NCBI GenBank assembly: GCA_964199315.1
Contig: OZ116712.1
Location: forward strand, 2,108,001 to 2,172,000
Source of the DNA: Orbicella franksi
Lineage: Eukaryota
Length of the DNA stretch: 64,000 nucleotides
Direction: 5' to 3'
Both the position numbers and the translations under genes were made by a program. Numbering within the stretch: position 1 is the first letter of the stretch; each line of letters starts with the position of its first letter. The notes beneath the pieces are model-generated. The model made no database searches, was not told where the DNA came from, and worked only from the letters and a program-made list of their open reading frames with translations. Positions 12,101-53,500 of the stretch are shown piece by piece.

Positions 12101-15100
12101 GTAACACTACACGTACTACTGAAATTTAATCAAAGCAAACACAATGTCTTAGCAGAACTTCACACAAGGTTGAACATTTTTTGTGCATGAATACAGCTGT
12201 CAGAAGAAGAAGCCCCATATGTATCCCCTTGAGCATCCCATAATAGCTATTTGAAATAATAACATTCAAAATGGCTGCCGTATCGGTAAAAAGATCTGAA
12301 AGATCACCTTTCTTTATTTGCGTGTGAAATGTCTTTTAAACTTAAATTTTACAAATGCTAGCAAAGTCTCAACGTTTTAGATGCGTGATTCGTGTCGTTG
12401 CGTGAAGCCTGGTAACAATTTTGATTTGAATATTTTTTTTTTACCCCGTTCCAGGCCCTTTGCTGTCCGCTCAGGAGAGCGTGGCATTGTTGACTCAGGC
12501 AGGCTTGTTCGATAATGCCTTCACAGTGGCTTTTCACTTTAATCTTCCAAAGGAAACAATATTTGAAGGACTAGCGTCAAGGTAGGCAATAAACAAGTTA
12601 AATATAGAGCTGTTTCCACTTGAGTGTGGAAAGAAATTCGCATTTGACTTGGTTTTTCATTACTACGCTAAACGATTGGCTTAAAAAAGCTATCACAGTT
12701 TGTCAACCAATCACGAGTAAAACTAAAACCAATCGTGACGCGTGTGCACACGTTTTCCCGCACTTCGCGTCAGCTACATGAGTTTGCTTCGCGTTCTGAT
12801 TTGTTCTCTGTATTGCCTTTGTGCCTTGTGATTGGCCATTTAGATTACGTTGGTTATAGTTTTATGACACTCGGCTGAAAACCGCTTTGTCCTACCGAAA
12901 GAAATTCGATCAAAACACGGCAAATTTTTGTGGGGGTGGATGAGGGGTTGCTTTTTGCTGCAGTATTGTTCCTTGTAAAGATAATTAATCCTTTGAATTG
13001 ATTCATGATTGGAATAAGGTAACTGCTGTACCGATAGAAAAAAGAATTGAATGTACGTTTAACAGTAACCTCCATGTAACTCAAAAAAAGTGCAGATGCA
13101 ATATTAGTATATGCGACGTATAAATGAACACCAAAGGAAATTGCACCGAAATATAAATCCACCGACTTTATTTAAATGAGAGGAAAACGGTACAGTTGGT
13201 CTGAACTAACGGTCAACGTCCTTTCAATACGGAAATATGTATGTTCCGTATGTATTCCATATGTATAGATCGGAAATATGAGCCTATTCCCTTTTTTCAG
13301 GAATCAAATAAAGCTCGAGCTACGCTCAGATTGGTTTCTTTTAGGGGTTTAATTCAAATGTTCAAACGAGAATCCCAACCTTTTCGTATAGGAGTTCCCT
13401 CCGCGTTCGAAATGTCTAACAAGAGGTGACAGAGTGAAGGAGTGATGGAGTCAAATCGCTCCACACACAACTACAACTCGGAAAAAAAATCGTTTCCAAG
13501 TTAAAAATGGGGTTGATCGAGCTCGTTTTTGAGTTGTAAGCGCTCAAAGCTAAACTTCAGGGTGTTTTTAGCAGGTCATACTGTTGCTATGGTAACTTAT
13601 TGTGTCACGAAATTGACACCAACATGTTCACTAATGACTGGGAAAATGTTTGATACCAGAGTGGTTATAATGACCCATCAAAATATACGTCTTGGAAACC
13701 CTTTTGGGCCACCTTTACTGACAACCGAGAGGAAATCGAAACTTGCCTTCTCGATGTGCTCCGTTCTGTATTTCGTTTCGTTTTTTATAAATGACGTTTA
13801 TCTTTGAACGGAGGATAAATGAAAAGGTAGAGTTTCTTATAAGTTAGCGTCCAATTCTCCGCGTATAAATACATTGCTTCTAAATGTTTCGAAATATTAT
13901 AAAGGAGGGATAATTAATGAAATTGCTTTTCATTTGAAATTATTTTCTCTGTGTGGACCTTATTTTGGGATGCGCTATTTGACTTTGTTACCCTTGTACC
14001 ACACTGATTGTAATCTGGAAAAAACTGAATTAACATTAAATTAAAATTAAATCGCACTGTCGGTCAGACTTGGCTTTTTACAGTACTACAATTATAGAGT
14101 TGGCAATGAACATGAGATAGAAAACTGACTAAAAACGGCGCTGTATTTTTTGTAGATGTCGTTCGAATCAGAAAGAGGATATAACGTCTAGTTTTACACT
14201 CTTTGTTTACATAACATTTGCCTTGCTGTCTTTACAACTGCCGCTCGAAGTTCGCGAAGACGCCAGCAATACAAAAAGGGATTGATGGACGAATTCATAA
14301 ATACTGCGGTATGAGCAAAGTTCCATTCTGTTTGCCAATCCTTGCCAGAGGTTGCAAAAACAGTTAATATAACATAAATAGGACAATAGCACAGGATTAA
14401 AGCGATGTAGAACAAGAAAATGTTGAATGCACTTCTTTTCAGTCGCGTCATGTTTAAGTTATTTTCAGCACTAGAGCTTTGCACTGCCTGTTGTTGAGCG
14501 TGGATCTGCGACTGATGCAAACGAACAATCAGATAAATTCTGATGTGAGAAAATGTAGAAATTATAACTAAAAGTATTGTACAAATGCTGAAAACAAAAC
14601 TGTGCAGACGTTTATTCCAGAAGAACAATCCTGATGCAAGGAAACTCAGTAACCATATAATTATTAAAGTATATTTAACACGGGATTCAGTCACTAAAGT
14701 AGCATATCTCATGTGATAGTGAAGAGCCAGAAATCGATCGACACTTAATGTTGTCATTGTCAAGAGAGAGACTCCACAAACGGAAAAAGACACTGTTACC
14801 ACGAGGTTGTTTAGTAATGGGTCTTTGGTAAGTTCCTTGGCAATAAAAAGCGGTTGAGCAATGAGACCAACGAGAAAATCTGAGACAGCAAGACTGTAGA
14901 GCATAATCATGTGCGTTGAGCGAATGGAGGGCGTTCTTATTATGGCGGCCAATACCAAAGCGTTGCCCAGAATGGATATGAGCATCAGTGGAGCGTTAAG
15001 AACACAGTTTATGATGATAACAGTTTCAGGAGTAGAGTTTTCTTCATTGTCTGAATGGTGGTTTGCCGATTCGTTGTTGTGTTCGTTCATCATCAACTTT

Positions 15101-18100
15101 TAAGTAACTGTGAACTCGTCAAACGATTTCAGTTTTTTTACACCTAAAAATGACCAAGCAATTCTTCTTTTCGTTTCCGCGAAAGCACGAAGCAAAGCTG
15201 AAGATTAGTGGAGAATCCCTGCGCCGTGAAAGCAACACAGTTTAGAACATTATCTAAAACATCGGTGATTCTTAATTATCTTCTCTTTTAGCTAAACGTT
15301 TTTCCGAAAGTGTGCATCAACCATTCATTCTTCTGATAAAAGCGACACCTGTTTATGGCGGCGGACATGGGCTTATAATGAGAATGTGATCCCAAATCTA
15401 ACTTGACGAGGGTTTGGTGAAAACGTCTGGTAATTTACTAAGTCGTTTTAGATAGAGGTTACTAAACATTTTTCATTGCTTTCCTTAATCATTAAGGGCG
15501 CTTAAAAACTATACGAATTGGAAAAACAGCTGAGTCGCAATTGGCGCGGGCAAGATTAAAACACAGTTATAAAAGCGACACCTGCTTATGACGACATGGA
15601 CTTGTAATGAGAATTTGATCCCAAATCTAACTTGACGAGGGTTTGGTGAAAACGTCTGGTAATTTACTAAGTCGTTTTAGATAGAGGTTATTAAACATTT
15701 TTCATTGCTTTCCTTAATCATTAAGGGCTCTTAAAAACTATACGAATTGGAAAAACAGCTGAGTCGCAATTAGCGCGGGCAAGATTAAAACACAGTTGTA
15801 AAGAAAATGAAATTGAAGTTTGTATTTATTGTTAGGACAAGCCTACGCGAGATCAAACTTCAACAGATCTTATTTAGATTTTTTTCTCTCTTATTCGCGT
15901 TTCTAGGTAATATTCAAACAGATGTTTTTCTTTTCCAATCCATCATTTACTGCACGGTGAATTATGGATGTTCAAAAGGAAAGAAATTTATTGGAAAGGT
16001 AACGTTAGTCGGTCGAATTTGATCAAATTAAAACTTTAAAAATTGTATGCGCACAAGTTAAGCGAATTTGTTATTATATATTAAGTCAAATTATTGTCGC
16101 ATTTTGATTGGTTGTCTCGTACGATCTATCGGAGGACGAAAGATAGGCACATAGATGACGTCATTAACATATTGTTTTAGCTCTTACCACATTTTGACGT
16201 TATCTGTGATCTTTTACTGAACAGACGCAGGGCAACATGGAATCTATTTGTTAAGTAGACCTTGGTTTATTCAGTTAAAGAAAGAGTAACTAGTTTTGTA
16301 CGCTCTGTTTACATAACATCTGCCTTACTGTCTTTACAACTGCCGCTCGAAGTTCGCGAAGACGCCAGCAATACAAAACTGGATTAATGGAAGAGTTCAT
16401 AAATACTGCGGTATGAGCAAAGTTCCATTCTGTTTGCCAATCCTTGCCAGAGGTTGCAAAGACAGTTAATATAACATATATAGGACAATAGCACAGGATT
16501 AAAGCGATGTAGAACAAAAAAATGTTAAATGCACTTCTTTTCAATCGCGCGATGTTTAAGTTATTTTCGGCGTTGGAACTTTGTACTGCCAGTTGTTGAG
16601 CGTGGATCTGCGACCGATGTTTACTAACAATTAGATAAACTCTGATGTAAGAAAAAGTGGAAATTAAAAGACAAATTATCGCAGAAATGCCGAAAAGAAA
16701 GCTGTGTAGACGCTTATTCCAAAAGAACAATCCTGATGCAAGGAAACTCAGTAACCATATAATTATTAAAGTATATTTAACACGGGATTCAGTGACTAAG
16801 GTTGCATATCTCATGTGATAGTGAAGAGCCAGAAATCGATCAACACTTAATGTTGTCATTGTTAAGACTGAGACTACACATACAGAAAATGCCACAGTTA
16901 CCACCAGGTTTTTTAGCAATTCCTCTTTGGTGATGACTTCCTTGGTAATATAAAGCGGTTGAGCAATGAGACCAACAAGAAAATCTGAAACAGCGAGACT
17001 GCAGAGCATAATCATGTGCGGCGTTGAACGAATGGAAGGCGTTCTTATTATGGCGGCCAATACCAAAGCGTTGCCCAGAATGGATATGAGCATCAGTGGA
17101 GCGTTAAGAACACAGTTTATGATGATAATAGTTTCAGGAGTAGAGTTGTCTTCATTGTCTGAATGTTGGTCTATCATTCTGAAGCTTAAAAGTAACCAAA
17201 TGATTTTTCCTTTCGTCCTGGCGTTAAGCGAAAGTCTTAATTAAATGTGGAGACGCCAATGTCAAGAGAACAACACAGCTCAATTCATTCACAAAAACGG
17301 GTTTTCATTCTTCCGTTTGTCATTTGCGGTACAGCTCATTATGAAAGTAATTATGGATGCGAGCTTTTACTGATATTATTGAACGTTTTTAGGCTAAAAA
17401 CTCGGCGAACAACTGTCAAAACTTGCCCTTTATCAATAGGGACGCTAAGTGCGTGAAATCAGGACAGTTTTTATTCATTTTCAAAAAAGAACTTCAATTC
17501 CAAATTAGTTCTTCCAGCTGACGTTTTAGAGAACTGTGTTGTCAACTATTCATATTTTCCGAATAAGCGACACTTGTACTTCTTTTTGCGAGATTGGCAC
17601 TTGACTAATTAGAACTGCAGGTTGTAACGTCAATGTAGAGTGGTTTTTCATTTGATTGACGAAAGAAATTTGCGTTTGCCTTGGTTTTACTACGCTACGT
17701 GATTGGCTTAAATAATGCACGCCATTTTTTCGTCCAATCAGAAGTAAAATCAAATCCAGTCGTAACTCGCTCGCACACGTCAGCACACGTCAGCACACGT
17801 CAGCTACATGTAGTTGCTTCAAGTTTTGATTGGTTCAGTCGCTGGGTTGTCTGTGTGATTACTTTGGTTTTGGTTTTACGACACTCATTTCAAACTGTTC
17901 TAACAAGAAAGCGTTTCATTTAATGCCGGTTGGGTCGTTAATTTACGGAAGCCTTTTACGTGAAGATTGCCCGAAATTATTAAATCACATCACAGCCATT
18001 TTTTCCTTTGCTCAAATAATAAAAAAAGCTGCTGCTAGATCGAAGAAGCATATAAAAGTGAACGTTTGTTCAGAGAGGGTAAAAAAGTGGTAAACGCTGT

Positions 18101-21100
18101 AAAACTTCAAGTTTCCGCTGATTTTGGGACTAAGTTTAAATTATTTCAGCTTCAACTTTAGTGTAATAGTTTTTCTGTTTTTTTTTTTTTTTTACATTTC
18201 TTTCTTTCTTATAAAGTGCATAATGTACTATTGTGATGGTTTAGGTCGCAATTTTCCGCCAAACTGTACGTGTACTAATGTACTATTGTGATGGTTTACA
18301 ATTAGGCGGCCATTTTCCACCAAATTGCTAAGGAACTCGAAAGCGTTGCCCAAAATGGATATGAGCATCAGTGGAGCGTTAAGAACACAGTTTATGATGG
18401 CAATAGTTTCAAGAGTAAGGTTTTCTTCATTTTGTGAATGATTGTTTGCCGACCCGTTGTCCTCTTTCTCGCATTTGTTTATCATCATCGGGGTTACACC
18501 GTAAATATAAACCGTTGTCGTTGTCGAATTGCTTCCACACGCAAACGACGACGAAATATTTCTCGTTTTCGTTCCAGGGGAAAGAAAAATCAAGCCTGAT
18601 CTACGAATGTATAAGTAACTCCGTACAACGCCCATTAATTGTATTAAAAAAAAAAAACTGCTGGTGATTCTAACTTAACTTCTTATTAAGACGTTTTATC
18701 ATAAAATGTGTCCCATTATTGATTGTACGGGACAATCGACACTGACAGATTTTTCGAAAGAATGACATTTGATTAAAAAGAAGCGACTTTTTAAAGCAAT
18801 GAGCTATAAAAAATTGCGAAAGAAAACTTTTCTTAAAAACATTAAAGAAATTAAAGAAAAAAAACGGTTAAAAAATACACGACGTTTCGACGTTCTTGGA
18901 CCTCATTATCAAGTAAAAAAACGGTGTGAATATTCCATAAATACAACAAAAACAACAGTTCATTAAAAAGAAAGGTAACGTAAAAATATGCTACAAGTTA
19001 AACAAAGAGTTTAGCACTGAAGGAGTCACTCTGAGTGTTAAGGTTAGACCCCAGTTCTTTGACGTAAACGAGGCAGTTAAATTTCCCGTGGCGCTTCTTG
19101 AAAACACGCCAGCAGTACAAAAGTGGATTGATGGACGAATTCATAAATACTGCGGTATGAGCAAAGTTCCATTCTCATGTGTTTGCCAATCCTTGCCAGA
19201 GGTTGCAAAGACAGTTAATACAACATACACAGGAAAATAGCATATGATTAAAACGATGTAGAACAAGAAAACTTTTAGTGCACTCCTTCTCAATCGTGCA
19301 ATATTCAAGTTATTTTCGGCATTGGAACTTTGCACTGCATGTTGTTGGGGCTGTATCTGTTACTTATGTTTACGAACAATTAGATAAATTTTGATGAAAT
19401 AAAGGGCAGTAAAAGCAGCTAAAAGAAAGCTGTGTAGACGGTCATTCCAAAAGTAGAAACCTGATGCAAGGAAACTCAGTAGCTATATAAATACTACGAA
19501 GCCTTGAACACGGGATTCCGTCAATAAAGTAGCATATCTCATGTGATAGTGAAGAGTCAGAAATCGATCAACGCTTAATGTTGTCATTGTTAAGAGAGAC
19601 ACTCCACAAACGGAAGAAGCTACTGTTACCACGAGGTTGTTTAGCAATGCTTCTTTGGTTAGGTCGTCGGCAATGAAAAGTGGTTGAGCAAAGAGACCAA
19701 CAAGAAAATCTGAGCATAATCATGTGCGGCGTTGAGCGAATGGAAGGCGTTCTTATCATTGCGGCCAATCCCAAAGCGTTGCCCAGAATGGATATGAGCA
19801 TCAGTGGAGCGTTAAGAACACAGTTTATGATGGTAATAGTTTCAGGAGTGCAGTTTTCTTCATGGTCTGAACTTTGGTCTATCATTCTGAAGCTTAAAAG
19901 TGACCAAGTGAGTTTTCCCTTTTGGTCCTGGCAAATGTGGAGACGCCAATATCGTGAGAAAATCACAGCTCCATTCAATCACCAAAACAGCTTTTTATTC
20001 TTCCGTTGATGTCATTTTCGGCAGAGTTCATTGTGAACGTGATTCTGAATTTGAGCTTTTACTGGTATTAATGAATGCTTTATGGCTAAAAAACTCGACG
20101 AACATCCTAAAAAAACTTGTCCTTTATCAATAGGGACGCTAAATGCGTAAAAGCAACACAGTTTTGTACGTTTTCAAAAAGGAACTTCAATTCCAAATTA
20201 ATTGCCCTAGCTGACGCTGCAGAGAACTGTGTTATCAACTATTCATATTTTCCGAAAAAAGCGACACTTAAACTACTTTTTGCGAGATTCGCACCGGTCT
20301 AATTACAATGGCGGGTTGTAATGTCAATACAGACAGGTTTTCACTAGGTAATTTGCACTTGCCTTGGTTTTTTATTACTACGCTACGTGATTGGCTTAAA
20401 AATTCACGCCACTTTTTCATCCAATCAGAAGTAAAATCAAATCCAATTAAGTCTCGCTCGCACATGTCAGCACATGACAGCTGAATGACTTGCTTCAAGT
20501 TTTGATTGGTTCACTTGATTTAGTGTGATTACTTTGGTTTCGGTTTTACGACACTCGTTTGAAAATTGTTCTTACTAGCGTTGATTTAATAATGGGTAAT
20601 TAAGTTACTGAGGCCTTTTAGGTGAAGATTGCCTAAATTTATTCAATTACATTCGAGCCATTCAGTAATTGTTTTGCTCAATTAATAAACAAGCTGCTGT
20701 TAGGTTGAAGAAGCATAAAGGTGACTATTTTTGATTTGTTCAGAGAGGGTAAAAAAAACCCAGCAGTAAACGTGTTAATATGTATTTAAGTTTTTGCTGA
20801 TTTTGGGACTAAATTTAAATTTCAGCTTCAACTTTAGTGTCATGTTTTCTCTTTTTTTTTACTTTCTTTCTTTTTTCTTTTATGAAATGCATAATGTACT
20901 ATTGTGATGGTTTCGGCGGCCATTTTCCCCCAAATTGCTAAGGAGTAAACTTTAATAGTTGATGGATTAGTTTATAAATAACGTCAATTAATTATTCTTG
21001 GCGAGTGTAGCGAGGGTGAGCCGGTTGTACGTTTGTGCATTTTGCAAAACGTGGAATACCTTCTGGCTATCACAGAGATATTTATATCACAGAAGACACC

Positions 21101-35567: not shown

Positions 35568-35614
<47 letters not shown>

Positions 35615-41600: not shown

Positions 41601-44600
41601 AGAACCGGTAAAATGTGGTGAAGTTTGCAAATTAAGCATTGTTTGAATCATTTACTCAGTAAATAGATCGGAATACGCGGCGCTCAATTTACAAGGGCAG
41701 AATTTCTTTTAGCTTAGCTTCTAATTCTCGACAACTTATTCACGGGTATACATCACTTTTGAATGCAGCTGAACGTGTCATCGAGGAAGTTGCTTTTGTT
41801 TGCTTTTCATTTAGAGTTTATTAAAGGAGGGATATAATAAAAAGCTTTTTTGGAGGTCAATCATTTTATAGAATTGTCAAATACTTGTGAATACTTTTTT
41901 TTTGTCATTTTACCATTACTGTTATTGCAAGGAGAAAATATTCCGTGCGCCGCGATCCAGTTTTGAAAGATCATGCAAATGTCGTCTATATCTTGTTTAT
42001 TTACACTTCTCCAATAATTCCCGCGCTAACAACATGAGCAGCAACACTGAGGCTTCGCTCACACTGGCGACATAACGACATAATGACATTTAAGAAATAG
42101 AAAACATGTCCTGTGTCTCTGTCGAGTTTTTGTCTAAATCTGCTAGCGTTCTATCACAAATGCCGTTCGCTGATTGGCTACGCTACTCACTATCTATTCT
42201 GTTGTAGATAGTGAGTAGCCTAGCAGTGTGCCCTTGTTATCAAAATGCCGGCCGATTCTTTGTTTTTTCGAAGTGCCTGAGAAGAGGATATAGATAAAGT
42301 TTTAAACGACTAGTAGATTAATATTAGAGCAACAAAATTATTCGCTCTCGATTTCTATGTGTGACAGAAATCTCGAGCTCATAATCTAATTGATTATTCC
42401 ACAGCTTCTTCGAGTTGTCCCAAACGTCCACGGGTGTTTCTATAGCTCGATAGACACACAGAGAACATGTTTTCTACTTCTTCAGGAAATTCTGCGACGA
42501 TAAAAATTAAACAACTTGTTTACTGTGATTATCAAAATGTAAATTCTCTTCTCTTGGGCCATCATTACGTCTTAGTTTGTCACGAATTAGATTATTCGTC
42601 TTCGATCTCTATACGTTATTTTCAGCCTCCAATAGGCCCGATTTATACTGGAGACGTATCATCCGTCTGGGACGAGCTTGGGCAAAGAACAGTAGCTCGT
42701 CCGATAATCCGTCTGTGTATAAATGCGGGCAGGAGACGAACTATCCACGAAAACTACACCTCCTTGCAAAACGTCTCTTTCGTCTTTTAAATCTGCCCTC
42801 AAAACATTCTTGTTTCGGAAATCCTACTTCTGATTTATTTTATTTTATGAGAAACTGTATTTTAATTAATTATTTCATTTATTTTATTTATTTACTGTTA
42901 TTAGAAATATTTTATAGGATTTAACTAATTTATTTTTTATAGTAATGTAAGCGCATTGAGTTTTTTTAANNNNNNNNNNNNNNNNNNNNNNNNNNNNNNN
43001 NNNNNNNNNNNNNNNNNNNNNNNNNNNNNNNNNNNNNNNNNNNNNNNNNNNNNNNNNNNNNNNNNNNNNNNNNNNNNNNNNNNNNNNNNNNNNNNNNNNN
43101 TTTGCTTAGAGTCCTTAGGGCCGAGACCAAACCATGGTCCTGGGGCACTAAGGGATAGCCAGTTTTTAGCTTGATAGCACCCTCCTCAAAATGTGTGCTG
43201 TACCTAGCAAGGTTATCTTTTGTAGTTCACTGATGCTTAATTGGCCGGGAATTCTTCCAAGATAAGTTTCTAGTCCCTTTTTGATAGCTCCAAGTGCTCT
43301 AATGATAACTGGTATCGTTTCCGTTCTCATGCCCCACATTCGGCTTGTTTCGATTTCCAAGTCCTTATATTTGGATAGTTTTTCACTGACTTTCACGGAT
43401 GTGTTTCTGTCTGATGGTACTGGCATGTCAATAAATTTACAGGTTTTCGTTTTGTGGTCTTTAATCACTATATCGGGTCTGTTGGCTGTTATTTTCCTGT
43501 CTGTGTGTATTGGCATGTCCCATAATATCGTGACATCCTCGTTTTCTGTAACTGTTTGCGGCTCATGGTCATACCACTTTTCTGATGTCTTTATATTATA
43601 GTTGTGACAGACTTTCCAGTGTATATACGCGGCTGCTTTATCGTGTCTGTGGGTATATTCTGTTTTCGCAAGGTCAGGACACCCAGACACGATATGGTCA
43701 ATTGTTTCGTCGTATTTGTTACACATCCTGCATAGGGGGCTAGTACCGTCTTTGATAATGCTGGCGTGGTATGATCTGGTAGCTAGGCTTTGGTCTTGGG
43801 CTGCGATTATGAATCCTTCCGTTTCTGCCTTCAGTCCACTGCTTTTGAGCCACTGGTTGGTTTTGTGGTGGTCAACATCTGCCTCCTTTATTCTCTTTGG
43901 GTATCTTCCATGTAGGGCTTTGTTCTCCCACTGCTTTGTTAATTTTTCTTGGGTCTTATTTCGTGCCATTTGTTTGGTTCTCTTTGCATATTTGGTGGTT
44001 GTTTCTTCTGCTTGTTTATCTGGTATTGTTAGGTCTAGTTCTTGTTTGAATTGTTCTGCTTGCCTTTGTATAGAGTACAATTTCTTTCTGCCATCATGTT
44101 CTTGCACTAGTTTAATTAGGGCATCATCAGTGTTCTTTAGGTATGTATCGAGCCCTATCGTGGTTGTTTTGTAGGAGGCTTCTAATTGGATAAGACCCCT
44201 ACCACCAGCATTTCTTGGGAGGTAGAGTCTGTCTACATCTGCTATTTTTGATAGGGTGAGTAGTTTTCTTGTTTTTGTGTCTAACCTCTTGATTTCACTC
44301 ATCTTCCAGTCGATTATGTTAAAGTGCAGCTAACCCCAAAATTTTGTTTTCGCTAAAACGAATCTAGACTTTATTCGAAGCATTTGGGCGAAGAAATTTT
44401 TGAATTTGGTTGAATCCTCGATTTTCTATGCCCTTTCAAAGTCGCGCTTGAAGGTTTCACGACCGCGTTTTAGGGAGTCTGGGGCGGCGGTACCTGATGA
44501 CGTCTACCCAGGAACCAAACACAATGGCGCCTCAGTCAACTCTCTGTATTTGCTCGAGAAAATGGAACACAAAACTAATCGTTCCGATGTATTTTGGGAC

Positions 44601-46682
44601 TAAAACGTCCAAGTTTTGTCTCAGAATCATTTCTTTTTCGTCACTGGAGTCAGAGTTAAGTTTCGATTCGGAAGACTCCGAAATAAACTTCGATCGAGCA
44701 CGTTCGACAACTGTGAACTCACTGCTTAGAGCTTTGAGAGCAATTTACAATATTTCAAACGACGAAGGGGAAGACTTCTTTGCGGACGAGTTGCTTGTAT
44801 ATTAGGAATGGAAAGCTAGATACGAAGTGGAGGAGCAGGCAAACGAAAAGCAGGAAAGAAAACTCAAGGACTGCTTTGGATGGTAATTTCGTCAACTAAA
44901 CATAAGATTCCCACGCGTGTTTATAGCCCGTTTACATTTGTCCTTAGCGAGAATGTATTTTATCAAGGTGTGATTGTTCTGTTAAATCCAGCTTGTGTTT
45001 TACTTTCAGTTGAATGCTTCATGTTTATAAGAGCGACGTACGTGTCGCAGTTTTCGAGACTTGATGACCTCCAAAACATTGGCTTCGATCGATTGAAAAT
45101 CGTATTGTTTGGACCTGTATTTTTGAAGCTGCGGGAAGCAAGGCGGAAGGAAACATTTCATACAATTACCGATTTCACATTGTCACACGTTTTAAGTCGT
45201 AACTCCAAAAAACCAATGTAAATTGTTCTCAAAGTTTGCAGCGAAATTCGTCGGATAAGCGAAAAGGATGTGTTCCCTAAGCGGTCCGCACATGTTACGC
45301 GGTCATATTTTCGACGCTATATCACAGAATCTTTGTCGCACTGCTGATTTCCAAACCTTCGAAAAACTCTGTGAGTCTAACAATTTTGTTATCATGTAAT
45401 TCTAAAGGATTAATCTTCGACTTTTATCTAAATCGAAAGAGAAATAAGTGTTGGTTAGCGGCGTACAGTTGCGATCTATTTACATATCAGTATAACGCTT
45501 CTTGATCATGATCGGATCACACAACTTTGTATGTTACAAATACTGCGGGATTGGAAGATATAGGTTGTAGGTAGTATTTCTACAAATTGCTGGTTAGCTT
45601 TAGGCAGAAAATTTATGAAAATAGCGTTCGAAAGTCTGCGGAACAAATTCCAGTGAGAGTTCTTCAATGGTTCTCACAGATTCAGTTCGCTTGTTTCGGT
45701 TCGACAAAATCAACCATCGTTTACGTCTTTGTTGCACCATTAGCCGATCATCGTCAGTTAATTGTACAGTATATCTTTCTTTAAATCTGGAATATTGCTG
45801 CAACAGCCGATAGCACCTCTGGAAGGCGTTTCTGCGCACTTTTCGAATGTGTATTGCACCATCCTGAAGGAAATGAGAGGACGTCAGATATCCAACCTTC
45901 CTGGGTAGACGTCACAAGAGCCGCTAGACCCATTCTCCTCAAACTCGGTCGTGAAACAAAATGGCGGTGTTTTGGAGCTATTTTCGAGATTTCGTCGGGG
46001 CACAGAAAATCGAAGATTTAACGGAATCCAAAAATTTTTTCGCAGAACTATTTCAAATAACAAGGAGATTCGTTTTAGCGAAAAAAAATTTTTGGGGTTA
46101 GGTGCACTTTAAAACTGTAGGTCACCGCTGGGATAGCTAAGGTGTTGATTGCCTCAAATCTATTGGCAGCATTGAGCTCCGTTTTTAGGACCATCCTTAC
46201 TCTGCGGTAGTATTCCTTCCTCACTCTTTCTTTCATCTTGGCATGCTGTATACCATCACCTTCATCCACGCCAAGGTATTTATATGTGTTCTCTTGGTCT
46301 AGTTCCTTGATACAGGTGTCAATGTCAAGTTGTAAATCGGAAGTTTCTGTCAGCTTTCCTCTTTTGAATGTGGCTTTAGCGCATTTGTCCAGCCCGAATT
46401 CCATCTTGATATCATTGCTGAATGTCTTTACAATATTGAGTAGGCCGGTTTGCTGGCTGTCACTTTTTGCATATGTTTTTAGGTCGTCCATATAAAAGAG
46501 GTGGCTGATTGTTCTACCCTGGGCTTCATACCCATAAGTGGTTGCCTTTAGTAATGAGCTCAGTGGAGCAAGGGCAAGACAGAACAGGAGTGGAGAGAGT
46601 CTCCTTGAAAGATTCCACTTTTGATATTGATAGGCCTTGATGTTATTGACCCTTCAGCGTGGTTGAGGTGTTTATTATTATA

Positions 46683-46727
<45 letters not shown>

Positions 46728-47538
46728 GAGCACTTTTCATACAAACTTGAATCTTACATGTATCTGGTAAAAAATTCAGAAATTCTGTTGTTCCTTAAGT
46801 TTTCGGTAATTATAATAGTAATAATAATATCAAAATAATAATAATAATAATAATGATTTATTATTATTATTAACTTAAGGAACAACAGAATTTCTGAATT
46901 TTTTACCAGATACATGTAAGATTCAAGTTTGTATGAAAANNNNNNNNNNNNNNNNNNNNNNNNNNNNNNNNNNNNNNNNNNNNNNNNNNNNNNNNNNNNN
47001 NNNNNNNNNNNNNNNNNNNNNNNNNNNNNNNNNNNNNNNNNNNNNNNNNNNNNNNNNNNNNNNNNNNNNNNTTTTAACTTATGGTGCCGAGTTCAATCCG
47101 TGAGCCTAGGGCAGTCATGAGTCTGCTGGATTACTTGATGGATAGAGTCCTCCTAAGTATGTGAGCAGTTCCAAGGACGGTCTTCTGTAGCTCTGTTATT
47201 CTAATATTGCCTGGGATCTTGCCGATGTAGTTTTCTGTTCCCTTCTTGACAAGCCCGAAAGCTCCAATGATCACTGGGACAGTTGTTTTCATTCCCCACG
47301 TTTTCTCGATTTCAATCTCAAGATCCTTGTACTTTGTGAGTTTTTCCATTGTTTTCAAGGAGGTGTTCCTTTCTGTGGGGATGGACATATCGATAAGCAG
47401 ACAGGTTCTTTCCTTCTTGTCTTTCACCACTATGTCTGGTCTGTTTGCTTTTATCTCTTTGTCGGTTTGGATTGGCATGTCCCAAAGTATAGTCGCTGTT
47501 TGGTTTTTTGTCACAGTAGCTGGTTCATGTTCGTAGTG

Positions 47539-47583
<45 letters not shown>

Positions 47584-50500
47584 GTTATTACCGATAGTGA
47601 CGTTGAAACCCAGGAGGGAGCCATTATTTAAACACTGTTGAAATAGGTTTTAATAGTTTATTTCTTCTTTTACTTACTTTTACCTTGTATATACCTCATT
47701 TATAAAAAAAAAAAAAAAGTAGTAGTAGTAGTAGTATTAGCATTAGTTTTTTTTTTTTTTTTTATTATTGTTGTTGTTGTTGTTGTTGTTGTTGTTATTG
47801 TTATTGTTATTGTTATTATTAAAACGCCAGCGGCTGTTTTCAGTAAACTATTAATTCAAGATGACACTGGACGAGCCGCAGGACACACCGATAGTTCGTC
47901 TCATAGTCCTTCCCATATTTATACTAGACGGATGATCCGTCTTGACGGATGATCCGTCTCTAGTATAAATCGGGCCAGCTTGTGTAAGGATATACATAAC
48001 TTGTAAATGCAATCGGAATGCTATGAGCTGAAGACGGTTTCTATGGTTGGTTTTCATTTAAAACTTGTCACATACAATTTAAAAAGAAAACTAAAAAGCA
48101 AAGTTCATCTTGTACGAGATCTTATTTATGGATCGATTTAACATCGCGAGGCCTCCTAGGTCCTGCAAATGACGTTTATTTCTTGTTTATTTACAAATCT
48201 TCGTCATTACAGAGCTAACAACAAGAGATTTAAATCACCTAGGGAGAAAGTAAAAATGACTATCTAACTGAATTCCGTTCGTATTTTATTTTGTCCAGAA
48301 AGAAGATAACTAGTTTTCTTCTGTTTGTTTACATAACATCTGCTTTGCTGTCTTCAAAACTGCCGCGCGAAGCTCGCGAAGACGCCAGCAATACAAAAAT
48401 GGATTGATGGACGAGTTACTAAATACCAAACTATAGACAAATGTCCATTCTGTTTGCCAGTCTTTGTCAGAGGTTCCATACCGAATTGACAAAACATACA
48501 ACGGAAAATAACATACAGTTAGAACTATGTAGAAGACGAAGGTATTCATTGCACTTCTTTTTAATCGCGTTATGTTTACGTTATTTGCGGCGTCAGAACT
48601 TTGCACTGCCTGTTGTTGAGCGTGAATTTGTAACTGATGTCGACGAACAATACGACAAATTCTGACGTAAGAAAACGCTGAAATTTGAAGGCATGTGACA
48701 ATAAGAACGCCAACAAGAATGCTATATACACGCTCATTCCAAAGTCCGAAACCAGATACAAGGAAACTAATCAACCATATAATTACCAAAGTAAATTTAA
48801 CACGGGATTCAGTCACTAAGGTAGCATAGGTCATGTGATAGTGAAGAGCCAGAAATCGATCCACAGTGATGGCTGTTATTGTCAACAGAGAAACTACACA
48901 AAAAGAATACCCTGACATCACTGCAACATGGTAGACGTAACGGCGTTTCAAGAGTAGATCACCAATATAAATCGGTTGAGCAATGAGACCAACAAGAAAA
49001 TCTGAAACAGCGAGACTGCAGAGCATAATCATGTGCGTTGAGCGAATGGAAGGCGTTCTTATTATGGCGGCCAATACCAAAGCGTTGCCCAGAATGGATA
49101 TGAGCATCAGTGGAGCGTTAAGAACACAGTTTATGATGATAAAAGTTTCAGGAGTTGAGTCGTCTTCCTTGTCTGAATGATGGTTTGCCGATCCGTTGTA
49201 TTTGTTGGTGTAGCTCATCGTTGATGTTTAAGATCAGCTTCTAAAGTTGTCTTAGAACTAAAAAGTGGACCAAGCAATTTTCCTTTTTCGTTCAGCTAAA
49301 AATATGTCAAAACTGTACAAACAGTGGATACCTAACACCATGAAAACATCACAGTTTAATGAAATTTCTAACAGAGACCTTGATTCTAAATGAGTCTTTT
49401 TGCTGACGTTTTCCGGAGTTATGTTCATTTTATTATTCATCTTTTGTTTTTTGTTTTGTTTTTTCTTGAAAAAGCGATCTTGGTTTCTGGCGAGAGTGCC
49501 ATATAATTAGAGTTGGACTTGCATTGTAAATATAATTCAAGTGCGTTTGATTAAACTTTTTCATTTACACAGGTTGCCTTTTTAGATGGAAATTGCTTTA
49601 CATTATTAAGCTGTAATAGAACTTTTCATTGCTTTCTTATTCATGGAGCAGCCTTAGTATTGGCTGAGGACCTCTAGAAGTCAATGCTGGAAAGTAAACA
49701 TCGCTCCTTTAAATAAAGTGCAGTTAAAACTATTGAGGAGAAATTTTAATTTTGTATGACTAACGAAACAAAAGAAAAATAAAATAACAGTTTTGCTCTC
49801 TCACGTGAGCTTCCTTAGGTCGACGAAATAACGAAATAACTAAAAATAAGAAAAAGCAGGTGTTGTTTGAGCTTCGTCTCTAGCAACGCCACCATTTACC
49901 TCTATTATCTCTAAGCAAATCGAGAAAATTTTCATTGCGTCTCGATATAACATCACAAAGCTCTGCAAGAATCAATTGTGCCTTATTATATTTGCAATTT
50001 TCTATGGTTAGTGCACTAAGAATATGAGCTATAAAACGAACTGAGAACTGACCGTGAAAACGAAAGATTGCTTTGTGGCTGTACTCTGGTTATTTTTCTT
50101 TTCGTTCAGAAAAAAAAATGTCTAGTGTTCTTCTGTTTGTTTACATAACATCTGTCTTGCTGTCTTTAGAACTGCCGTTCGAAGCTCACGAACACGCCAG
50201 CAATACAAAAATGGATTGATGGACGAATTAAGGAATGTTAAGGTAGAAGCAAAGTTCCATTCTATTTGAAAATTCCACTGTGAGATTGCATTCACTGTTA
50301 ATACAATGTACAATGGAAGATAACATACAATCAAAGCTATGAAGAAGACGAAAGTGTTCCTTGCACTTTTTTCCACTTTTTTCCGCGCTATGTTTAAGTT
50401 GTTTTCCGTGTCCAAACTTTGCACTGCCTGTTGTTGAGCGTCAATTTGTAGTTGATGCCGACGAGCAATTTGAAAAATCCTCATGTAAGATAGTGTTGAA

Positions 50501-53500
50501 ATTATAAGACAAATGAGAATAACAAGGCTTGTACTAAGGTGTTGTGCACTTGTATTCCAAAACTTCAAACACGATAAAAGGAAACTAAACAACCATATAA
50601 TTATTATAGTATATTCAACGCGGGACTCAGTCACTAAAGTAGGATATCTCATGTGATAGTGAAGAGCCAGAAATCGATCGACAGTGATAGCTGTTATTGC
50701 TATAAGAGACACCACAGATAAAGAACTCACTGTTATTTTCCAAACAAGGTGAATAGAACCGTCTTCCGTAAGTTCTTTAGCAATATAAATCGGTTGAGCA
50801 ATGAGACCAACAAGGAGATCTGAAACAGCGAGACTGCAGAGCATAATCATGTGCGGTGAGCGAATTGAAGGCGTTCTAATTATGGCGGCCAATACCAAGG
50901 CGTTGCCCAGAATGGATATGAGCATCAGTGGAGCGTTAAGAACACAGTTTATGATGATAGTAGTTTCAGGAGTCGAGTTGTCTTCATTGTCTGAATGACG
51001 GTCTGCCGATCCTTTTTGGAGTTCGTGGTTACTTGGGTTGTCCATGATCAACGTTTAAGATTTAAATTCTTGATTTTTGAGCAGGAAAGTGCAGACAATA
51101 ATTTTTCCTTTTCATTCCACCGAAAAGGACGTAATTAAACTGGTCAACAGTGAAGACGCCACCTCCTCGAATCCAACGCAGTTAAGCCGGTGCATCGTCT
51201 TAATCAAACTTGCTCCTCCACCTTACATTTTTTCTGAATGTGTTGAGTCCCCTTTTAATCTTTTCCAAAAAAGCGACAGCGGTTTGTGCCGAGATTGGCA
51301 TGTAATTCATGTACTCAGAATTGGTCCAACAATGCAAATATAACTGAAAGATGGTGTGATTCAATTTCGAGTGATTTTTTGTGTTCACTCTATTCAGTAA
51401 TAACACAGTTTTTCATTTCTTCTCAGCCCTTGTTCATCAAGCAATTTTTTGACGCATTGAAAAACACTTACGAGACAATACTAGCTCATACCGGGAAAGT
51501 AAAGAAAAAGATTAGTTTTAAACAAAGAAAAAATGAAGTTTGTGCTGATTGTTTGGACAACAGTATAAAATCTACTTAGCTCTAACTCCTACAGAGTAAA
51601 CATCGCTTGAAGATGCATTTGGAAGTTTTATAGAGGCGGGCTTCTTCTATTTGGGTCTCACTTAAAATTCATGACATACGAAATATCAATGAAAATAAAA
51701 TTGAAAACAACGTTTTATATCCTAGGTGATCTTCTTTAGGAATCTGATCTGCAACTTCTCTCAATATTTCAATACACTGAGGAAAATTTCAGTGCACCTC
51801 GATCTAACTTGACGAAGTCTCTCTCTTTGCATTGTGTTAATATTTAATTTCGTTCAAAAAATGATTACTAGTTTACTTCCGTTTGTTGACATAATACCTG
51901 CTTTGCTGTTTTTACAATTGGCGCACGGAGTTCACGAAGACGCCAGCAATACAAAAATGGATTGATACAAGAGTTGCTGAACACTAGGGTAGAAGAAAAT
52001 TTCCATCCTATCTTCCAGTCCTTACTGACAGACGAAACTATATACACCGGAAAATAACAAATAATTAAAACTATGTACAAGACAAAAGTGTTCATTGCAC
52101 TTCTTTTCAATCGTGTTATGTTTAAGTTGTTTTCAGCGTCAGAACGTTCCACTGCCTGTTGTTGAGCGTTAATGTGTAGCTGATGCCGACGAACAATGCG
52201 ATAAATTCTGATGTAAGAAAATGTGGAAATTATAAGACAAATGACTATAAAAACGCCTATAAGAAAGATTTGTACACTTATTTTCCAAAAATAAAAAAAT
52301 GGTACAAGTAAACTAATCGACCATATGATTATTAAAAGATATTTAACACGGGATTCTGTCACTAAAGTAGCATATCTCATGTGATAGTGAAGAGCCAGAA
52401 ATCGATCCACAGTGATGGCTGTTATTGTCAGTAGAGAAACTCCACATAAGAAAGGTCCTATAATCTTCCAAACGTAATTAACGTAACGGTGTTTCGTAAG
52501 TTGTTGAGCGATATAAATCGGTTGAGCAATGAGACCAACAAGGAGATCTGAAACAGCGAGACTGCATAGCATAATCATGTGCGGCGTAGAGCGAATGGAA
52601 GGCGTTCTTATTATGGCGGCCAATACCAAAGCCTTGCCCAGAATGGATATGAGCATCATTGGAGCGTTGAGAATACAGTTTATGATGGTGACAGCTTCTC
52701 GAGTAGAGTTGTCTTCATTGTATGAATGATTTTCTCCCGAGCTGTTGTCGTGTAGGTCGATATTGTTCATTATCGAAACTGATTATGAATTCGTAGCGTC
52801 AGTGGTAAATTCTTGATTTAAGCTAAAATGTTGTCAAAAGTATGTTCTTTTCGTTCCGGCGAAAAGCCTGATGTCAGAAAACTGGTCAAATACTGAAGAC
52901 GCCTGTACTATGATAACAACACAGTTTAGCTCTGCACCGGTTTGTGTTTCATTGTGAATATAACCCAATAGCGTTTGATTAAACTGCGGTTGATTTTTGG
53001 GAGACTTTTCAAGATGGAAATTACCTTCTATTATTCAATGCAACCTTTCATTTCCTCTATTATTCATCAAGCACCCTGCTAATGATGCCCGCCGATCTTC
53101 GAGTTATTACAACCTCAAGGAGAGCAAACAACAGCAATAAAGCATGCTAAAATTGACGATTGTGCTAAGTTTTGAGACAATGAAATAAAAATTATCTTCA
53201 ACTTAGTCAGGTTATTTTGTCTGTCAATCGAATGCTCAATCAGTACTGATAACAACAAACTTTATTTCTCCCATTCAGTCCACATACCGATATTTACACT
53301 TAATTAATAAAGAGATGGGGGGTGCGGGCTGGCTTCGGAAATAACTACAAAGTCAAAGGGGGCAGGCAGGCAGTCAGTAATAGTGAACTAGTTATTGCCC
53401 TCTGTTTTACATAATAGGTTGCCATAGCAACAGTATAACCTGTAAAACGCCCTGAATTTTGGCTCAATGCTTGTTGCTTATAGCTCAAAAACGAACTTGG

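What the first reader, a model, noticed from the sequence alone, without database searches (positions are those of the whole stretch)
14194..52770. Modular receptor shuffling: promoter/N-terminus modules recombined with TM3-TM7 cores through an invariant TM1-TM2 block
Seen: about 85 nt encoding TM1-ICL1 (GGCGTTCTTATTATGGCGGCCAATACCAAAGCGTTGCCCAGAATGGATATGAGCATCAGTGGAGCGTTAAGAACACAG on +) has 0-1 differences, including synonymous sites, in the intact internal copies compared (about 4 in the edge copy GPCR-14), while TM3-TM7 diverge strongly. Sorting by 5' module (upstream DNA plus N-tail) and 3' module (core plus 3' flank) gives: 1=alpha/a, 2=beta/a, 4=beta/a, 5=beta/b, 6=beta/b, 7=gamma/b, 8=alpha/c, 9=delta/d, 10=epsilon/e, 11=alpha/f, 12=delta/d, 13=epsilon/e, 14=zeta/f. 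TM1 is normally among the least conserved GPCR helices, so protein constraint cannot explain synonymous invariance. Inference: the block is homogenised by conversion and acts as a recombination joint. It would couple new ligand pockets to existing promoters, making this a combinatorial diversification system for a receptor family. This is the strongest candidate for an undescribed system here.
Basis: partly seen in the sequence, partly recalled or inferred. Interest (0 to 1): 0.85.

Follow-up and report, generated by a model that had tools for sequence, protein, structure and literature searches.

The report
Coral receptor array with homogenised TM1
A stony-coral array of 14 tandem receptor genes shares a stretch of about 100 bases that stays almost letter-identical between copies, and past unequal crossovers and gene conversions between copies switch there; this is ordinary tandem-array evolution, not a dedicated shuffling system, although why the stretch is the same in several coral genera is not settled.

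Summary
There are 14 minus-strand, intronless rhodopsin-class GPCR copies: 11 intact, G11 with a premature stop, G4 frameshifted and G3 a 5' fragment. All carry the 78-nt TM1 block, with 0-2 mismatches in intact internal copies and 4 in G14. Synonymous diversity is about 0.04 in TM1 against 0.33 gene-wide, while NPxxY/helix 8, equally protein-conserved, keeps about 0.3.

An orthologous array from another coral (order f-e-d-b-a) shows that only three combinations are derived. Each is the by-product of an unequal crossover or a conversion: G11 (switch in 7 bp at 40414-40420), G5/G6 and G1. G9 and G12 share an 816-nt zero-difference tract starting in the block. All five mapped 5' edges lie between -58 and +169 of the block start, where the longest identical tracts between paralogs lie. 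GC3 is 0.54 there against 0.34 in the core. This resembles regional gene conversion in protocadherin clusters.

Unresolved: the block consensus is identical in several corals, and its cross-species divergence is 2-5 times below the neutral yardsticks. Conversion alone cannot produce that, but statistical power is low. Both assembly gaps are intergenic. Two other first-reader notes on this same stretch propose the same crossover histories.

The parts
14194..15096 (-). G1, intact GPCR; alpha upstream with a-type core (derived combination)
   Evidence: ORF. Core is 90% identical to G2 from -54 to +820 only; upstream is about 80% identical to G8/G11. The switch lies at 15059-15065.
16290..17177 (-). 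G2, intact; beta/a (ancestral combination)
   Evidence: Upstream and 3' flank match the a gene of L001.
18228..18635 (-). G3, 5' fragment (N-tail plus the first 51 nt of the block)
19000..19978 (-). G4, frameshifted pseudogene; beta/a; block has 3 mismatches
22619..23506 (-). G5, intact; beta upstream with b core (derived)
   Evidence: The switch lies between 23275 and 23460.
26049..26936 (-). G6, intact; beta/b (derived; a duplicate of G5)
   Evidence: The switch lies between 26705 and 26890.
29924..30841 (-). G7, intact; gamma/b (ancestral)
   Evidence: Upstream matches the b gene of L001.
32327..33247 (-). G8, intact; alpha/c; 5' parent of G11
36167..37075 (-). G9, intact; delta/d
36167..36982 (-). 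816-nt tract with zero differences from G12 (48310-49125): a recent gene conversion from block base +4 to the stop codon
   Evidence: The flanks are 3-10% diverged.
37881..38810 (-). G10, intact; epsilon/e
39766..40671 (-). G11, chimeric junction gene (G8-like 5', G14-like 3') with a premature TGA in helix 8
40414..40420 (-). Crossover interval of G11, in TM2, at +153 to +159 from the block start
   Evidence: 316 of 334 informative sites to the left are G8-like; 140 of 152 to the right are G14-like.
42970..47800 (.). Insertion between G11 and G12 that holds both assembly gaps and a 378-aa ORF (43166-44302) with no Pfam match
48310..49218 (-). G12, intact; delta/d (duplicate of G9)
50122..51051 (-). 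G13, intact; epsilon/e (duplicate of G10)
51868..52770 (-). G14, intact; zeta/f (ancestral); 3' parent of G11
33000..40622 (.). Copy A of the roughly 7.4 kb tandem segmental duplication; copy B is 40424-52727, interrupted by the insertion
   Evidence: colinear blocks at 92.7-96.1% identity.
36909..36986 (-). The 78-nt TM1 block in G9. The other copies start (+ strand) at 14930, 17038, 18313, 19746, 23367, 26797, 30669, 33072, 38629, 40496, 49052, 50870 and 52601.
54598..54810 (+). NUP160 C-terminal TPR exon of the host gene, antisense to the array; used as a single-copy calibrator
   Evidence: Pfam PF23347, E 2.5e-14. pS against L001 is 0.128.

Best explanation
This is a tandem array of intronless rhodopsin-class GPCR genes from a family that is hugely expanded in stony corals. 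It evolves by unequal crossing-over between paralogues (non-allelic homologous recombination) and by interlocus gene conversion.

The 5' coding segment (end of the N-tail, TM1, ICL1, TM2; about -60 to +170 around the block) is the most protein-constrained part of the gene. It holds by far the longest perfectly identical tracts between paralogues, so exchanges start or resolve there. Divergence in the ligand-facing core blocks exchange elsewhere. This feedback keeps about 100 nt nearly identical, synonymous sites included, and raises its GC3.

Swapped upstream/core combinations are by-products of this process:
- A crossover between G14 and G8 duplicated the d-e-f triplet and left G11 as the chimeric junction gene.
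- A crossover between a b-type and an a-type neighbour made G5/G6.
- Conversion patches replaced the coding core of G1 and made G9 and G12 identical.

Shown here: the events, their breakpoints, their polarity against an outgroup array, and the GC3 shift. Inferred: the homology-limited mechanism and the feedback.
For: Synonymous trough in TM1: pS is 0.04 against 0.33 gene-wide, while equally protein-conserved segments keep pS about 0.3.

Chimeras and breakpoints:
- G11 switches at +152 to +160.
- G5/G6 switch between -16 and +169.
- G1 switches at -58 to -52, and its homology to G2 ends at +820.
- G9 and G12 share an 816-nt zero-difference tract starting at block base +4.
- In another coral, L003 is a c-type gene with a d-type patch whose 5' edge is at +3 to +54.
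- A triplet scan finds no strong breakpoints inside TM3-TM7 except that patch's 3' edge.

Incongruence: AU tests reject the upstream classes as clades on the core data.

Polarity: the outgroup array L001 has order f-e-d-b-a with combinations zeta/f, epsilon/e, delta/d, gamma/b and beta/a. It is orthologous, because the flanks are colinear.

Duplication: the duplicated segments are colinear.

Substrate for exchange: the longest identical tracts between lineages (35-97 nt) are always in the 5' segment. The runner-up tracts at DRF, ICL3 and helix 8 coincide with the 3' edges of the patches.

GC3 is 0.54 in the block against 0.34 in the core, as in converted protocadherin regions (PMC1852091).

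pN/pS is about 0.4 in both block and core, so all changes are removed alike.

A different subfamily's array (L007/L008) has its own TM1 trough with different codons. The effect is therefore positional and not tied to a sequence motif.
Against: Conversion cannot lower divergence between species, yet the block consensus is identical in the window species, L001, L003, Orbicella faveolata and all metagenome samples.

Cross-species block pS between the window and L001 is 0.05-0.07. The yardsticks are 0.128 (NUP160 exon), 0.166 (noncoding flanks) and 0.234 (orthologous cores).

There are no species-specific block variants shared by paralogues, except two in Oculina. Those may be inherited, because Oculina monophyly is not rejected (p 0.445).

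Only five events support the clustering of breakpoints, and chimeras with 5' breakpoints are the easiest to see.

Noel et al. 2023 state that gene conversion is very rare in corals (PMC10236652).

The identical G9/G12 tract could in principle be a polishing artefact of the assembly.
Confidence: 0.72

Rival explanations
1. The block is held constant mainly by selection on the nucleotide sequence itself, or on identity between copies. Possible reasons include homology-dependent regulation of the family, or codon-specific translation of the TM1 signal anchor. Recombination there would be a side effect of the resulting identity.
For: The block consensus is identical across several coral assemblies and genera, including solitary and dispersed copies.

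Block pS stays flat at about 0.03-0.05 while nearest-core pS rises from 0 to 0.36.

Cross-species block pS is 2-5 times below the yardsticks.

Neutral simulations give P of 0.02 or less with the core yardstick, and 0.003-0.21 with the lowest one.

Six very divergent genes carry the same block with 1-2 synonymous but 2-6 non-synonymous changes.
Against: Relatives at 51-58% identity keep the TM1 peptide but use different codons at about half of the conserved residues, and their own array has its own homogenised version. So there is no shared motif.

No RNA structure exceeds shuffled controls (z +0.3 and +0.5), and there is no Rfam match.

Pseudogenes keep the block about as well as intact genes: G4 has 3 of 78 changes, and the Oculina pseudogenes have 1-2 of 78 from the Oculina consensus.

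pN/pS in the block equals that of the core instead of approaching 1.

Block pS does not differ significantly from the only single-copy coding yardstick (7/100 against 5/39).
Confidence: 0.2
2. One reading: a dedicated combinatorial system that uses the block as a joint to couple ligand pockets to promoters at appreciable frequency.
For: The 5'/3' incongruence and the clustering of exchange edges in the 5' segment.
Against: Only three derived combinations have arisen since the split from the L001 species (noncoding p about 0.17). Each comes with the duplication or patch expected from ordinary unequal exchange, and one product (G11) is a pseudogene.

The exchange edges are not confined to the block.

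No recombination signal was found. The imperfect 9-bp inverted repeat at the block ends is broken by variants without compensation and is absent from the L007 subfamily.

Promoter function of the upstream modules was not tested.
Confidence: 0.04
3. The invariance is an artefact: either protein constraint alone, or collapse or polishing of paralogues during assembly.
For: TM1 is at least 90% conserved at protein level in the subfamily. The window contains two gaps next to the duplicated segment.
Against: The synonymous trough is 8-fold, while other equally constrained segments keep pS about 0.3.

The same block is found in independent assemblies made with different technologies, from ENA, JGI and NCBI.

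L002/L010 independently reproduces the G14-G13-G12 order.
Confidence: 0.03

Closest known systems
Regional gene conversion in teleost and mammalian clustered protocadherin variable exons (Yu et al. 2007, PMC1852091)
   Same: Both are tandem arrays of single-exon receptor units. One segment is homogenised to near 100% nucleotide identity, synonymous sites included, with a fairly discrete boundary. GC3 is above 50% in the homogenised part. The ligand- or recognition-determining part escapes homogenisation and diversifies.
   Different: In protocadherins the homogenised part is the 3' end of the variable exon and is lineage-specific. Here it is a roughly 100-nt 5' segment (TM1), and its consensus is the same in several coral genera and in dispersed copies.
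Chimeric junction genes from unequal crossover in tandem arrays (globin Lepore-type genes and red/green opsin hybrids, from my own knowledge; chimeric globin pseudogene in Sirenia, PMC6526914, abstract only)
   Same: A crossover between misaligned paralogues duplicates the intervening genes. It leaves a hybrid gene with the upstream region of one parent and the body of the other. G11, and probably G5/G6, fit this.
   Different: Here the parents are only about 80% identical overall. The exchange is therefore confined to the one segment with long identical tracts.
Conversion-limited divergence of tandem receptor paralogues (TLR1/TLR6, PMC2077338; mosaic divergence model for HMA4, bioRxiv 10.1101/2025.10.29.685298); titles and abstracts only
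   Same: Interlocus conversion keeps part of the gene similar while selection lets another part diverge, which gives mosaic genes.
   Different: Those cases involve two or three paralogues. Here the family has hundreds of members per genome, across many arrays.
Tandemly duplicated GPCR expansions in corals (Noel et al. 2023, PMC10236652)
   Same: The same kind of gene family. Rhodopsin-like GPCRs are the most frequently amplified orthogroups in corals, mostly by tandem duplication, and their function is unknown.
   Different: That paper concludes that gene conversion is very rare in corals. This locus shows at least three conversion patches and a homogenised segment.

Membership tests
Rhodopsin-class (class A) GPCR | Match to the 7tm_1 profile above its curated threshold | tested here: met
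   G9: PF00001, E 7.8e-26, 91.5 bits against a cut-off of 30.5. Homologues carry the same Pfam family.
Rhodopsin-class (class A) GPCR | Signature motifs: N1.50 (GN), D2.50 (LAxxD), DRY-type motif at the end of TM3, NPxxY in TM7 | tested here: met
   Read directly from the translations: GNALV, LAVSD, DRF (a DRY variant) and NPFLY. The seven helices were not predicted separately.
Concerted evolution by interlocus gene conversion | A regional excess of paralogue identity that includes synonymous sites | tested here: met
   pS is 0.04 in TM1 against 0.33 overall.
Concerted evolution by interlocus gene conversion | Identifiable conversion tracts and phylogenetic incongruence between gene regions | tested here: met
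   The 816-nt identical G9/G12 tract, the G1 patch, the L003 patch and the AU tests.
Concerted evolution by interlocus gene conversion | Raised GC3 in the converted region | tested here: met
   0.54 in the block against 0.34 in the core.
Concerted evolution by interlocus gene conversion | Paralogues within a species more alike than orthologues between species, with species-specific homogenised variants | tested here: not met
   Block pS is 0.04 within the window and 0.05-0.07 against L001, with no fixed differences. Only Oculina has two shared changes, and these can be explained by descent. The full-family claim 'concerted evolution alone' is lowered accordingly.
Tandem segmental duplication by non-allelic homologous recombination | Colinear tandem copies, a chimeric gene at the junction, and an outgroup that lacks the duplication | tested here: met
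   L001 has a single f-e-d set.
Programmed DNA-rearrangement or cassette system (V(D)J-like, antigenic-variation-like) | Recombination signal sequences or a dedicated recombinase, and rearrangement at somatic or high germline frequency | not testable with these tools
   No signal-like element was seen. The imperfect inverted repeat at the block ends is not conserved. Rearrangement frequency needs population or single-cell data.

The most novel reading that the evidence does not exclude
The block is kept the same across paralogues and coral genera because nucleotide identity between copies is itself under selection. One possibility is homology-dependent control of which receptor a cell expresses; another is small RNAs made from one copy that act on all the others. 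Recombination at the block would then be a consequence. This would make it a coding-embedded, family-wide cis or trans element, specific to each receptor subfamily.
Probability: 0.15. Interest if true: 0.8.

Novelty: new member of a known kind. Interest (0 to 1): 0.5.

Why it matters
Rhodopsin-like GPCRs are the most amplified gene families in stony corals, and their function is unknown (PMC10236652). This locus gives a worked, breakpoint-level history of how such an array grows and reshuffles. It also shows that interlocus gene conversion does act in coral tandem arrays, contrary to the general statement in that paper.

It also isolates a short coding segment whose letters are the same in several coral genera. 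If that proves to exceed what conversion and protein constraint allow, it would point to a regulatory element hidden inside the coding sequence of a very large receptor family.

For practical work, the block is a ready-made universal primer or probe site for this subfamily. It is also a known trap for assembly and for orthology calling.

Tried and rejected
RNA structure: folding 131 nt around the block on either strand is no better than shuffled sequence (z +0.31 and +0.50). Rfam at gathering threshold finds nothing in the window.

Deep nucleotide element: rejected. Relatives at 51-58% identity keep 18-20 of the 25 TM1 residues but only 8-10 identical codons.

Oculina's two shared block changes as proof of inter-chromosomal concerted evolution: not usable, because the core data do not reject Oculina monophyly (p 0.445).

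Calibrating Orbicella and Oculina against the window: failed. Their copies are about equally distant (78-83%) from every window lineage and have no alignable flanks.

The orthologous array holding P0003 could not be fetched (no DNA).

GC-biased conversion as the cause of the slow cross-species rate: a back-of-envelope calculation from GC3 0.54 against 0.34 gives a bias too weak to lower the overall rate (my inference, not a tool result).

The 378-aa ORF between the gaps has no Pfam match. I did not pursue it.

The first version of the simulation timed out. The rewritten one ran.


Full report
WHAT IS THERE

The 78-nt block occurs 12 times in the window with 3 or fewer mismatches, against none expected by chance. 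A looser scan adds G14 (4 mismatches) and a diverged fragment, G3. All 14 copies lie on the minus strand.

Eleven copies are intact ORFs of 295-309 codons (G5's ORF also runs in frame further upstream). G11 has a premature TGA in helix 8, G4 is frameshifted, and G3 keeps only the N-tail and the first 51 nt of the block.

G9 matches Pfam 7tm_1 at E 7.8e-26. The translations show GN (N1.50), LAVSD (D2.50), DRF and NPFLY.

A protein search finds more than 2,000 relatives. Those that carry a name are from the stony corals Oculina patagonica and Orbicella faveolata, annotated with names such as 'histamine H2 receptor-like'. A NUP160 C-terminal TPR exon lies on the opposite strand 1.8 kb beyond G14, so the array is antisense to that host gene.

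THE GAPS

Both runs of N lie in a roughly 4.8 kb insertion between G11 and G12. The paralogous G8-G9 spacer has no such insertion. Homology to that spacer runs up to 42969 and resumes at 47801. No receptor coding sequence is affected. Continuity across the gaps cannot be checked here, and only the adjacency of G11 and G12 depends on it.

On a codon alignment of the 12 full-length copies, Nei-Gojobori windows of 15 codons give pS 0.039-0.042 across TM1, against 0.333 overall. The values rise gradually through ICL1-TM2 (0.11-0.24) to 0.5-0.6 at ECL1/TM3. NPxxY/helix 8 has pN 0.03 but pS 0.29, so protein constraint alone does not give the trough.

TM1-ICL1 is at least 90% conserved in 120 homologues. 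In relatives at 35-58% identity TM1 varies as usual.

MODULES AND THEIR HISTORY

- alpha upstream: G1, G8, G11
- beta: G2, G4, G5, G6
- delta: G9, G12
- epsilon: G10, G13
- G7 and G14: each unique

Most paralogue pairs are alignable only from about -50 to +820, counted from the first base of the block in gene orientation. The core data reject the alpha clade (delta lnL 329, p 0.005) and the beta clade (delta lnL 256, p 0.0001).

A 21-kb locus from another coral assembly (L001) carries five genes in the order f-e-d-b-a, each the well-supported orthologue of one window lineage. The DNA upstream of the two arrays is colinear at 80-90% identity, so the arrays are orthologous.

L001 shows that zeta/f, epsilon/e, delta/d, gamma/b and beta/a are ancestral combinations. 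G11 (alpha/f), G5/G6 (beta/b) and G1 (alpha/a) are derived in the window's lineage.

THE EVENTS

G11 is G8-like at 316 of 334 informative sites up to +152, and G14-like at 140 of 152 sites from +160 on. The window holds a tandem duplication whose colinear blocks are 92.7-96.1% identical: 33000-40622 and 40424-52727. One unequal crossover between G14 and G8 explains both the extra d-e-f set and the chimeric junction gene.

G5/G6 switch from beta-type to G7-type somewhere between -16 and +169. This is what a crossover between a b gene and the a gene downstream of it gives.

G1 switches from alpha-type to G2-type at -58 to -52, and its similarity to G2 ends just past the stop codon. It is therefore a conversion-like patch.

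G9 and G12 share 816 nt without a single difference, from block base +4 to the stop codon, between flanks that are 3-10% diverged.

In a third assembly, L003 is a c-type gene carrying a d-type patch, with its 5' edge at +3 to +54 and its 3' edge near +520 to +590.

A triplet scan over the coding sequence of 25 intact copies finds no other strongly supported breakpoint within TM3-TM7. All five 5' edges therefore lie between -58 and +169, although only two of the five are confined to the 78-nt block.

WHY THERE

Between every pair of lineages the longest identical tract (35-97 nt) lies in this 5' segment. The next longest tracts lie at DRF/ICL2, ICL3 and NPxxY/helix 8, where the 3' edges of the patches fall. 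GC3 is 0.54 in the block, 0.44 in ICL1-TM2 and 0.34 in the core. This is the footprint reported for converted regions of protocadherin clusters (PMC1852091).

Between orthologues, pN/pS is 0.41 in the block and 0.40 in the core, so changes of both kinds are removed alike.

A different subfamily (58% identical; L007/L008) uses different codons for much the same TM1 peptide. Its own paralogues nonetheless show pS 0.00-0.06 in TM1 against 0.18-0.23 overall. The trough is therefore a positional property of these arrays and is not tied to one sequence motif.

I read this as homology-limited exchange. Protein constraint keeps the 5' segment similar, exchange then homogenises it, and divergence of the ligand-facing core blocks exchange elsewhere.

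WHAT THIS DOES NOT EXPLAIN

Any two copies from different species must be at least as diverged as the species themselves, however much conversion occurs. A simulation confirms that conversion rate leaves mean cross-species divergence unchanged.

Yet the block consensus is identical in:
- the window
- L001
- L003
- Orbicella faveolata, including a solitary copy
- every coral metagenome sample scanned with codon-neutral peptide patterns

Only Oculina differs, at two synonymous sites.

Block pS between the window and L001 is 0.070 for orthologues and 0.053 for all pairs. The yardsticks are:
- 0.128 for the NUP160 exon (5 of 39 sites)
- 0.166 for aligned noncoding flanks
- 0.234 for orthologous cores

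Across the metagenome copies, block pS stays at 0.025-0.05 while nearest-core pS rises from 0 to 0.36. At core pS of 0.44 or more the block is bimodal. Seven copies have block pS of 0.10 or less (six of them at core pS 0.52-0.61, one at 0.20), and 22 copies lie at 0.25-0.83.

With only about 20 synonymous sites the test is weak. The simulated probability of values as low as observed is 0.003-0.21 for the lowest yardstick, 0-0.11 for the middle one and 0.02 or less for the highest, and it rises with conversion rate. I therefore treat extra constraint on the letters as suggested, not shown.

Against a functional RNA or DNA motif:
- There is no structure beyond shuffled controls.
- There is no Rfam match.
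- There is no deep codon conservation.
- Pseudogenes keep the block about as well as intact genes.

COMPARISON WITH WHAT IS KNOWN

The pattern is a close analogue of regional gene conversion in clustered protocadherins, and of chimeric junction genes from unequal crossover. It differs in that the homogenised piece is short, lies at the 5' end, and is shared across genera.

Noel et al. 2023 report rhodopsin-like GPCRs as the most amplified coral families and state that gene conversion is very rare in corals. This locus is a counter-example. I found no paper on this block.

VERDICT

The claim that the block is homogenised and acts as a recombination joint is supported in a loose sense: the joint is the 5' conserved segment. 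The claim of a combinatorial diversification system is not supported.

This is a new member of a known kind, with one open question that could raise its interest.

Two other first-reader notes on this same stretch (s1-249520 and s1-249616) proposed the same crossover histories. I tested both independently here and agree with them.

Noticed in passing
window 54598-54810 (+): An exon matching the Nup160 C-terminal TPR domain lies antisense, 1.8 kb beyond G14. The orthologous arrays in two other assemblies also sit next to NUP160 sequence. I did not check for NUP160 exons on the other side of the array.
   Followed up: partly
window 42970-47800: A roughly 4.8 kb insertion bounded by or containing both assembly gaps. 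It has a 378-aa minus-strand ORF (43166-44302) with no Pfam match and internal inverted repeats. It is probably a transposable element that the assembler could not close.
   Followed up: partly
window 36909-36986 and every other block copy: The block is bracketed by an imperfect 9-bp inverted repeat (bases 3-11 and 69-77 of the 78). Natural variants break it without compensation, and the L007 subfamily lacks it, so it is probably coincidental.
   Followed up: partly
L048, L049, L056, L058, L064, L082 (metagenome loci): Six very divergent family members (core pS 0.52-0.61, pN about 0.3) carry the window's block with only 1-2 synonymous changes but 2-6 non-synonymous changes. Other equally divergent members have fully diverged codons. 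This may reflect ectopic transfer of the block between subfamilies.
   Followed up: no
L004 (Oculina patagonica chromosome CM126645.1): In this Oculina array five of six copies are broken ORFs, and a reverse-transcriptase element sits among them, yet all keep the block within 1-2 changes of the Oculina consensus.
   Followed up: partly
L002/L010 gene at 3676 compared with window G11: In another individual's assembly the d-type gene carries the same rare block variant (I to V; A to G at block codon position 64) as G11 in the window. This is either a conversion between neighbours or a recurrent mutation.
   Followed up: no
window 22619-23650 (-): The G5 ORF extends in frame about 48 codons upstream of the start shared with G6. 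This is probably a chance open frame in the beta upstream module.
   Followed up: no
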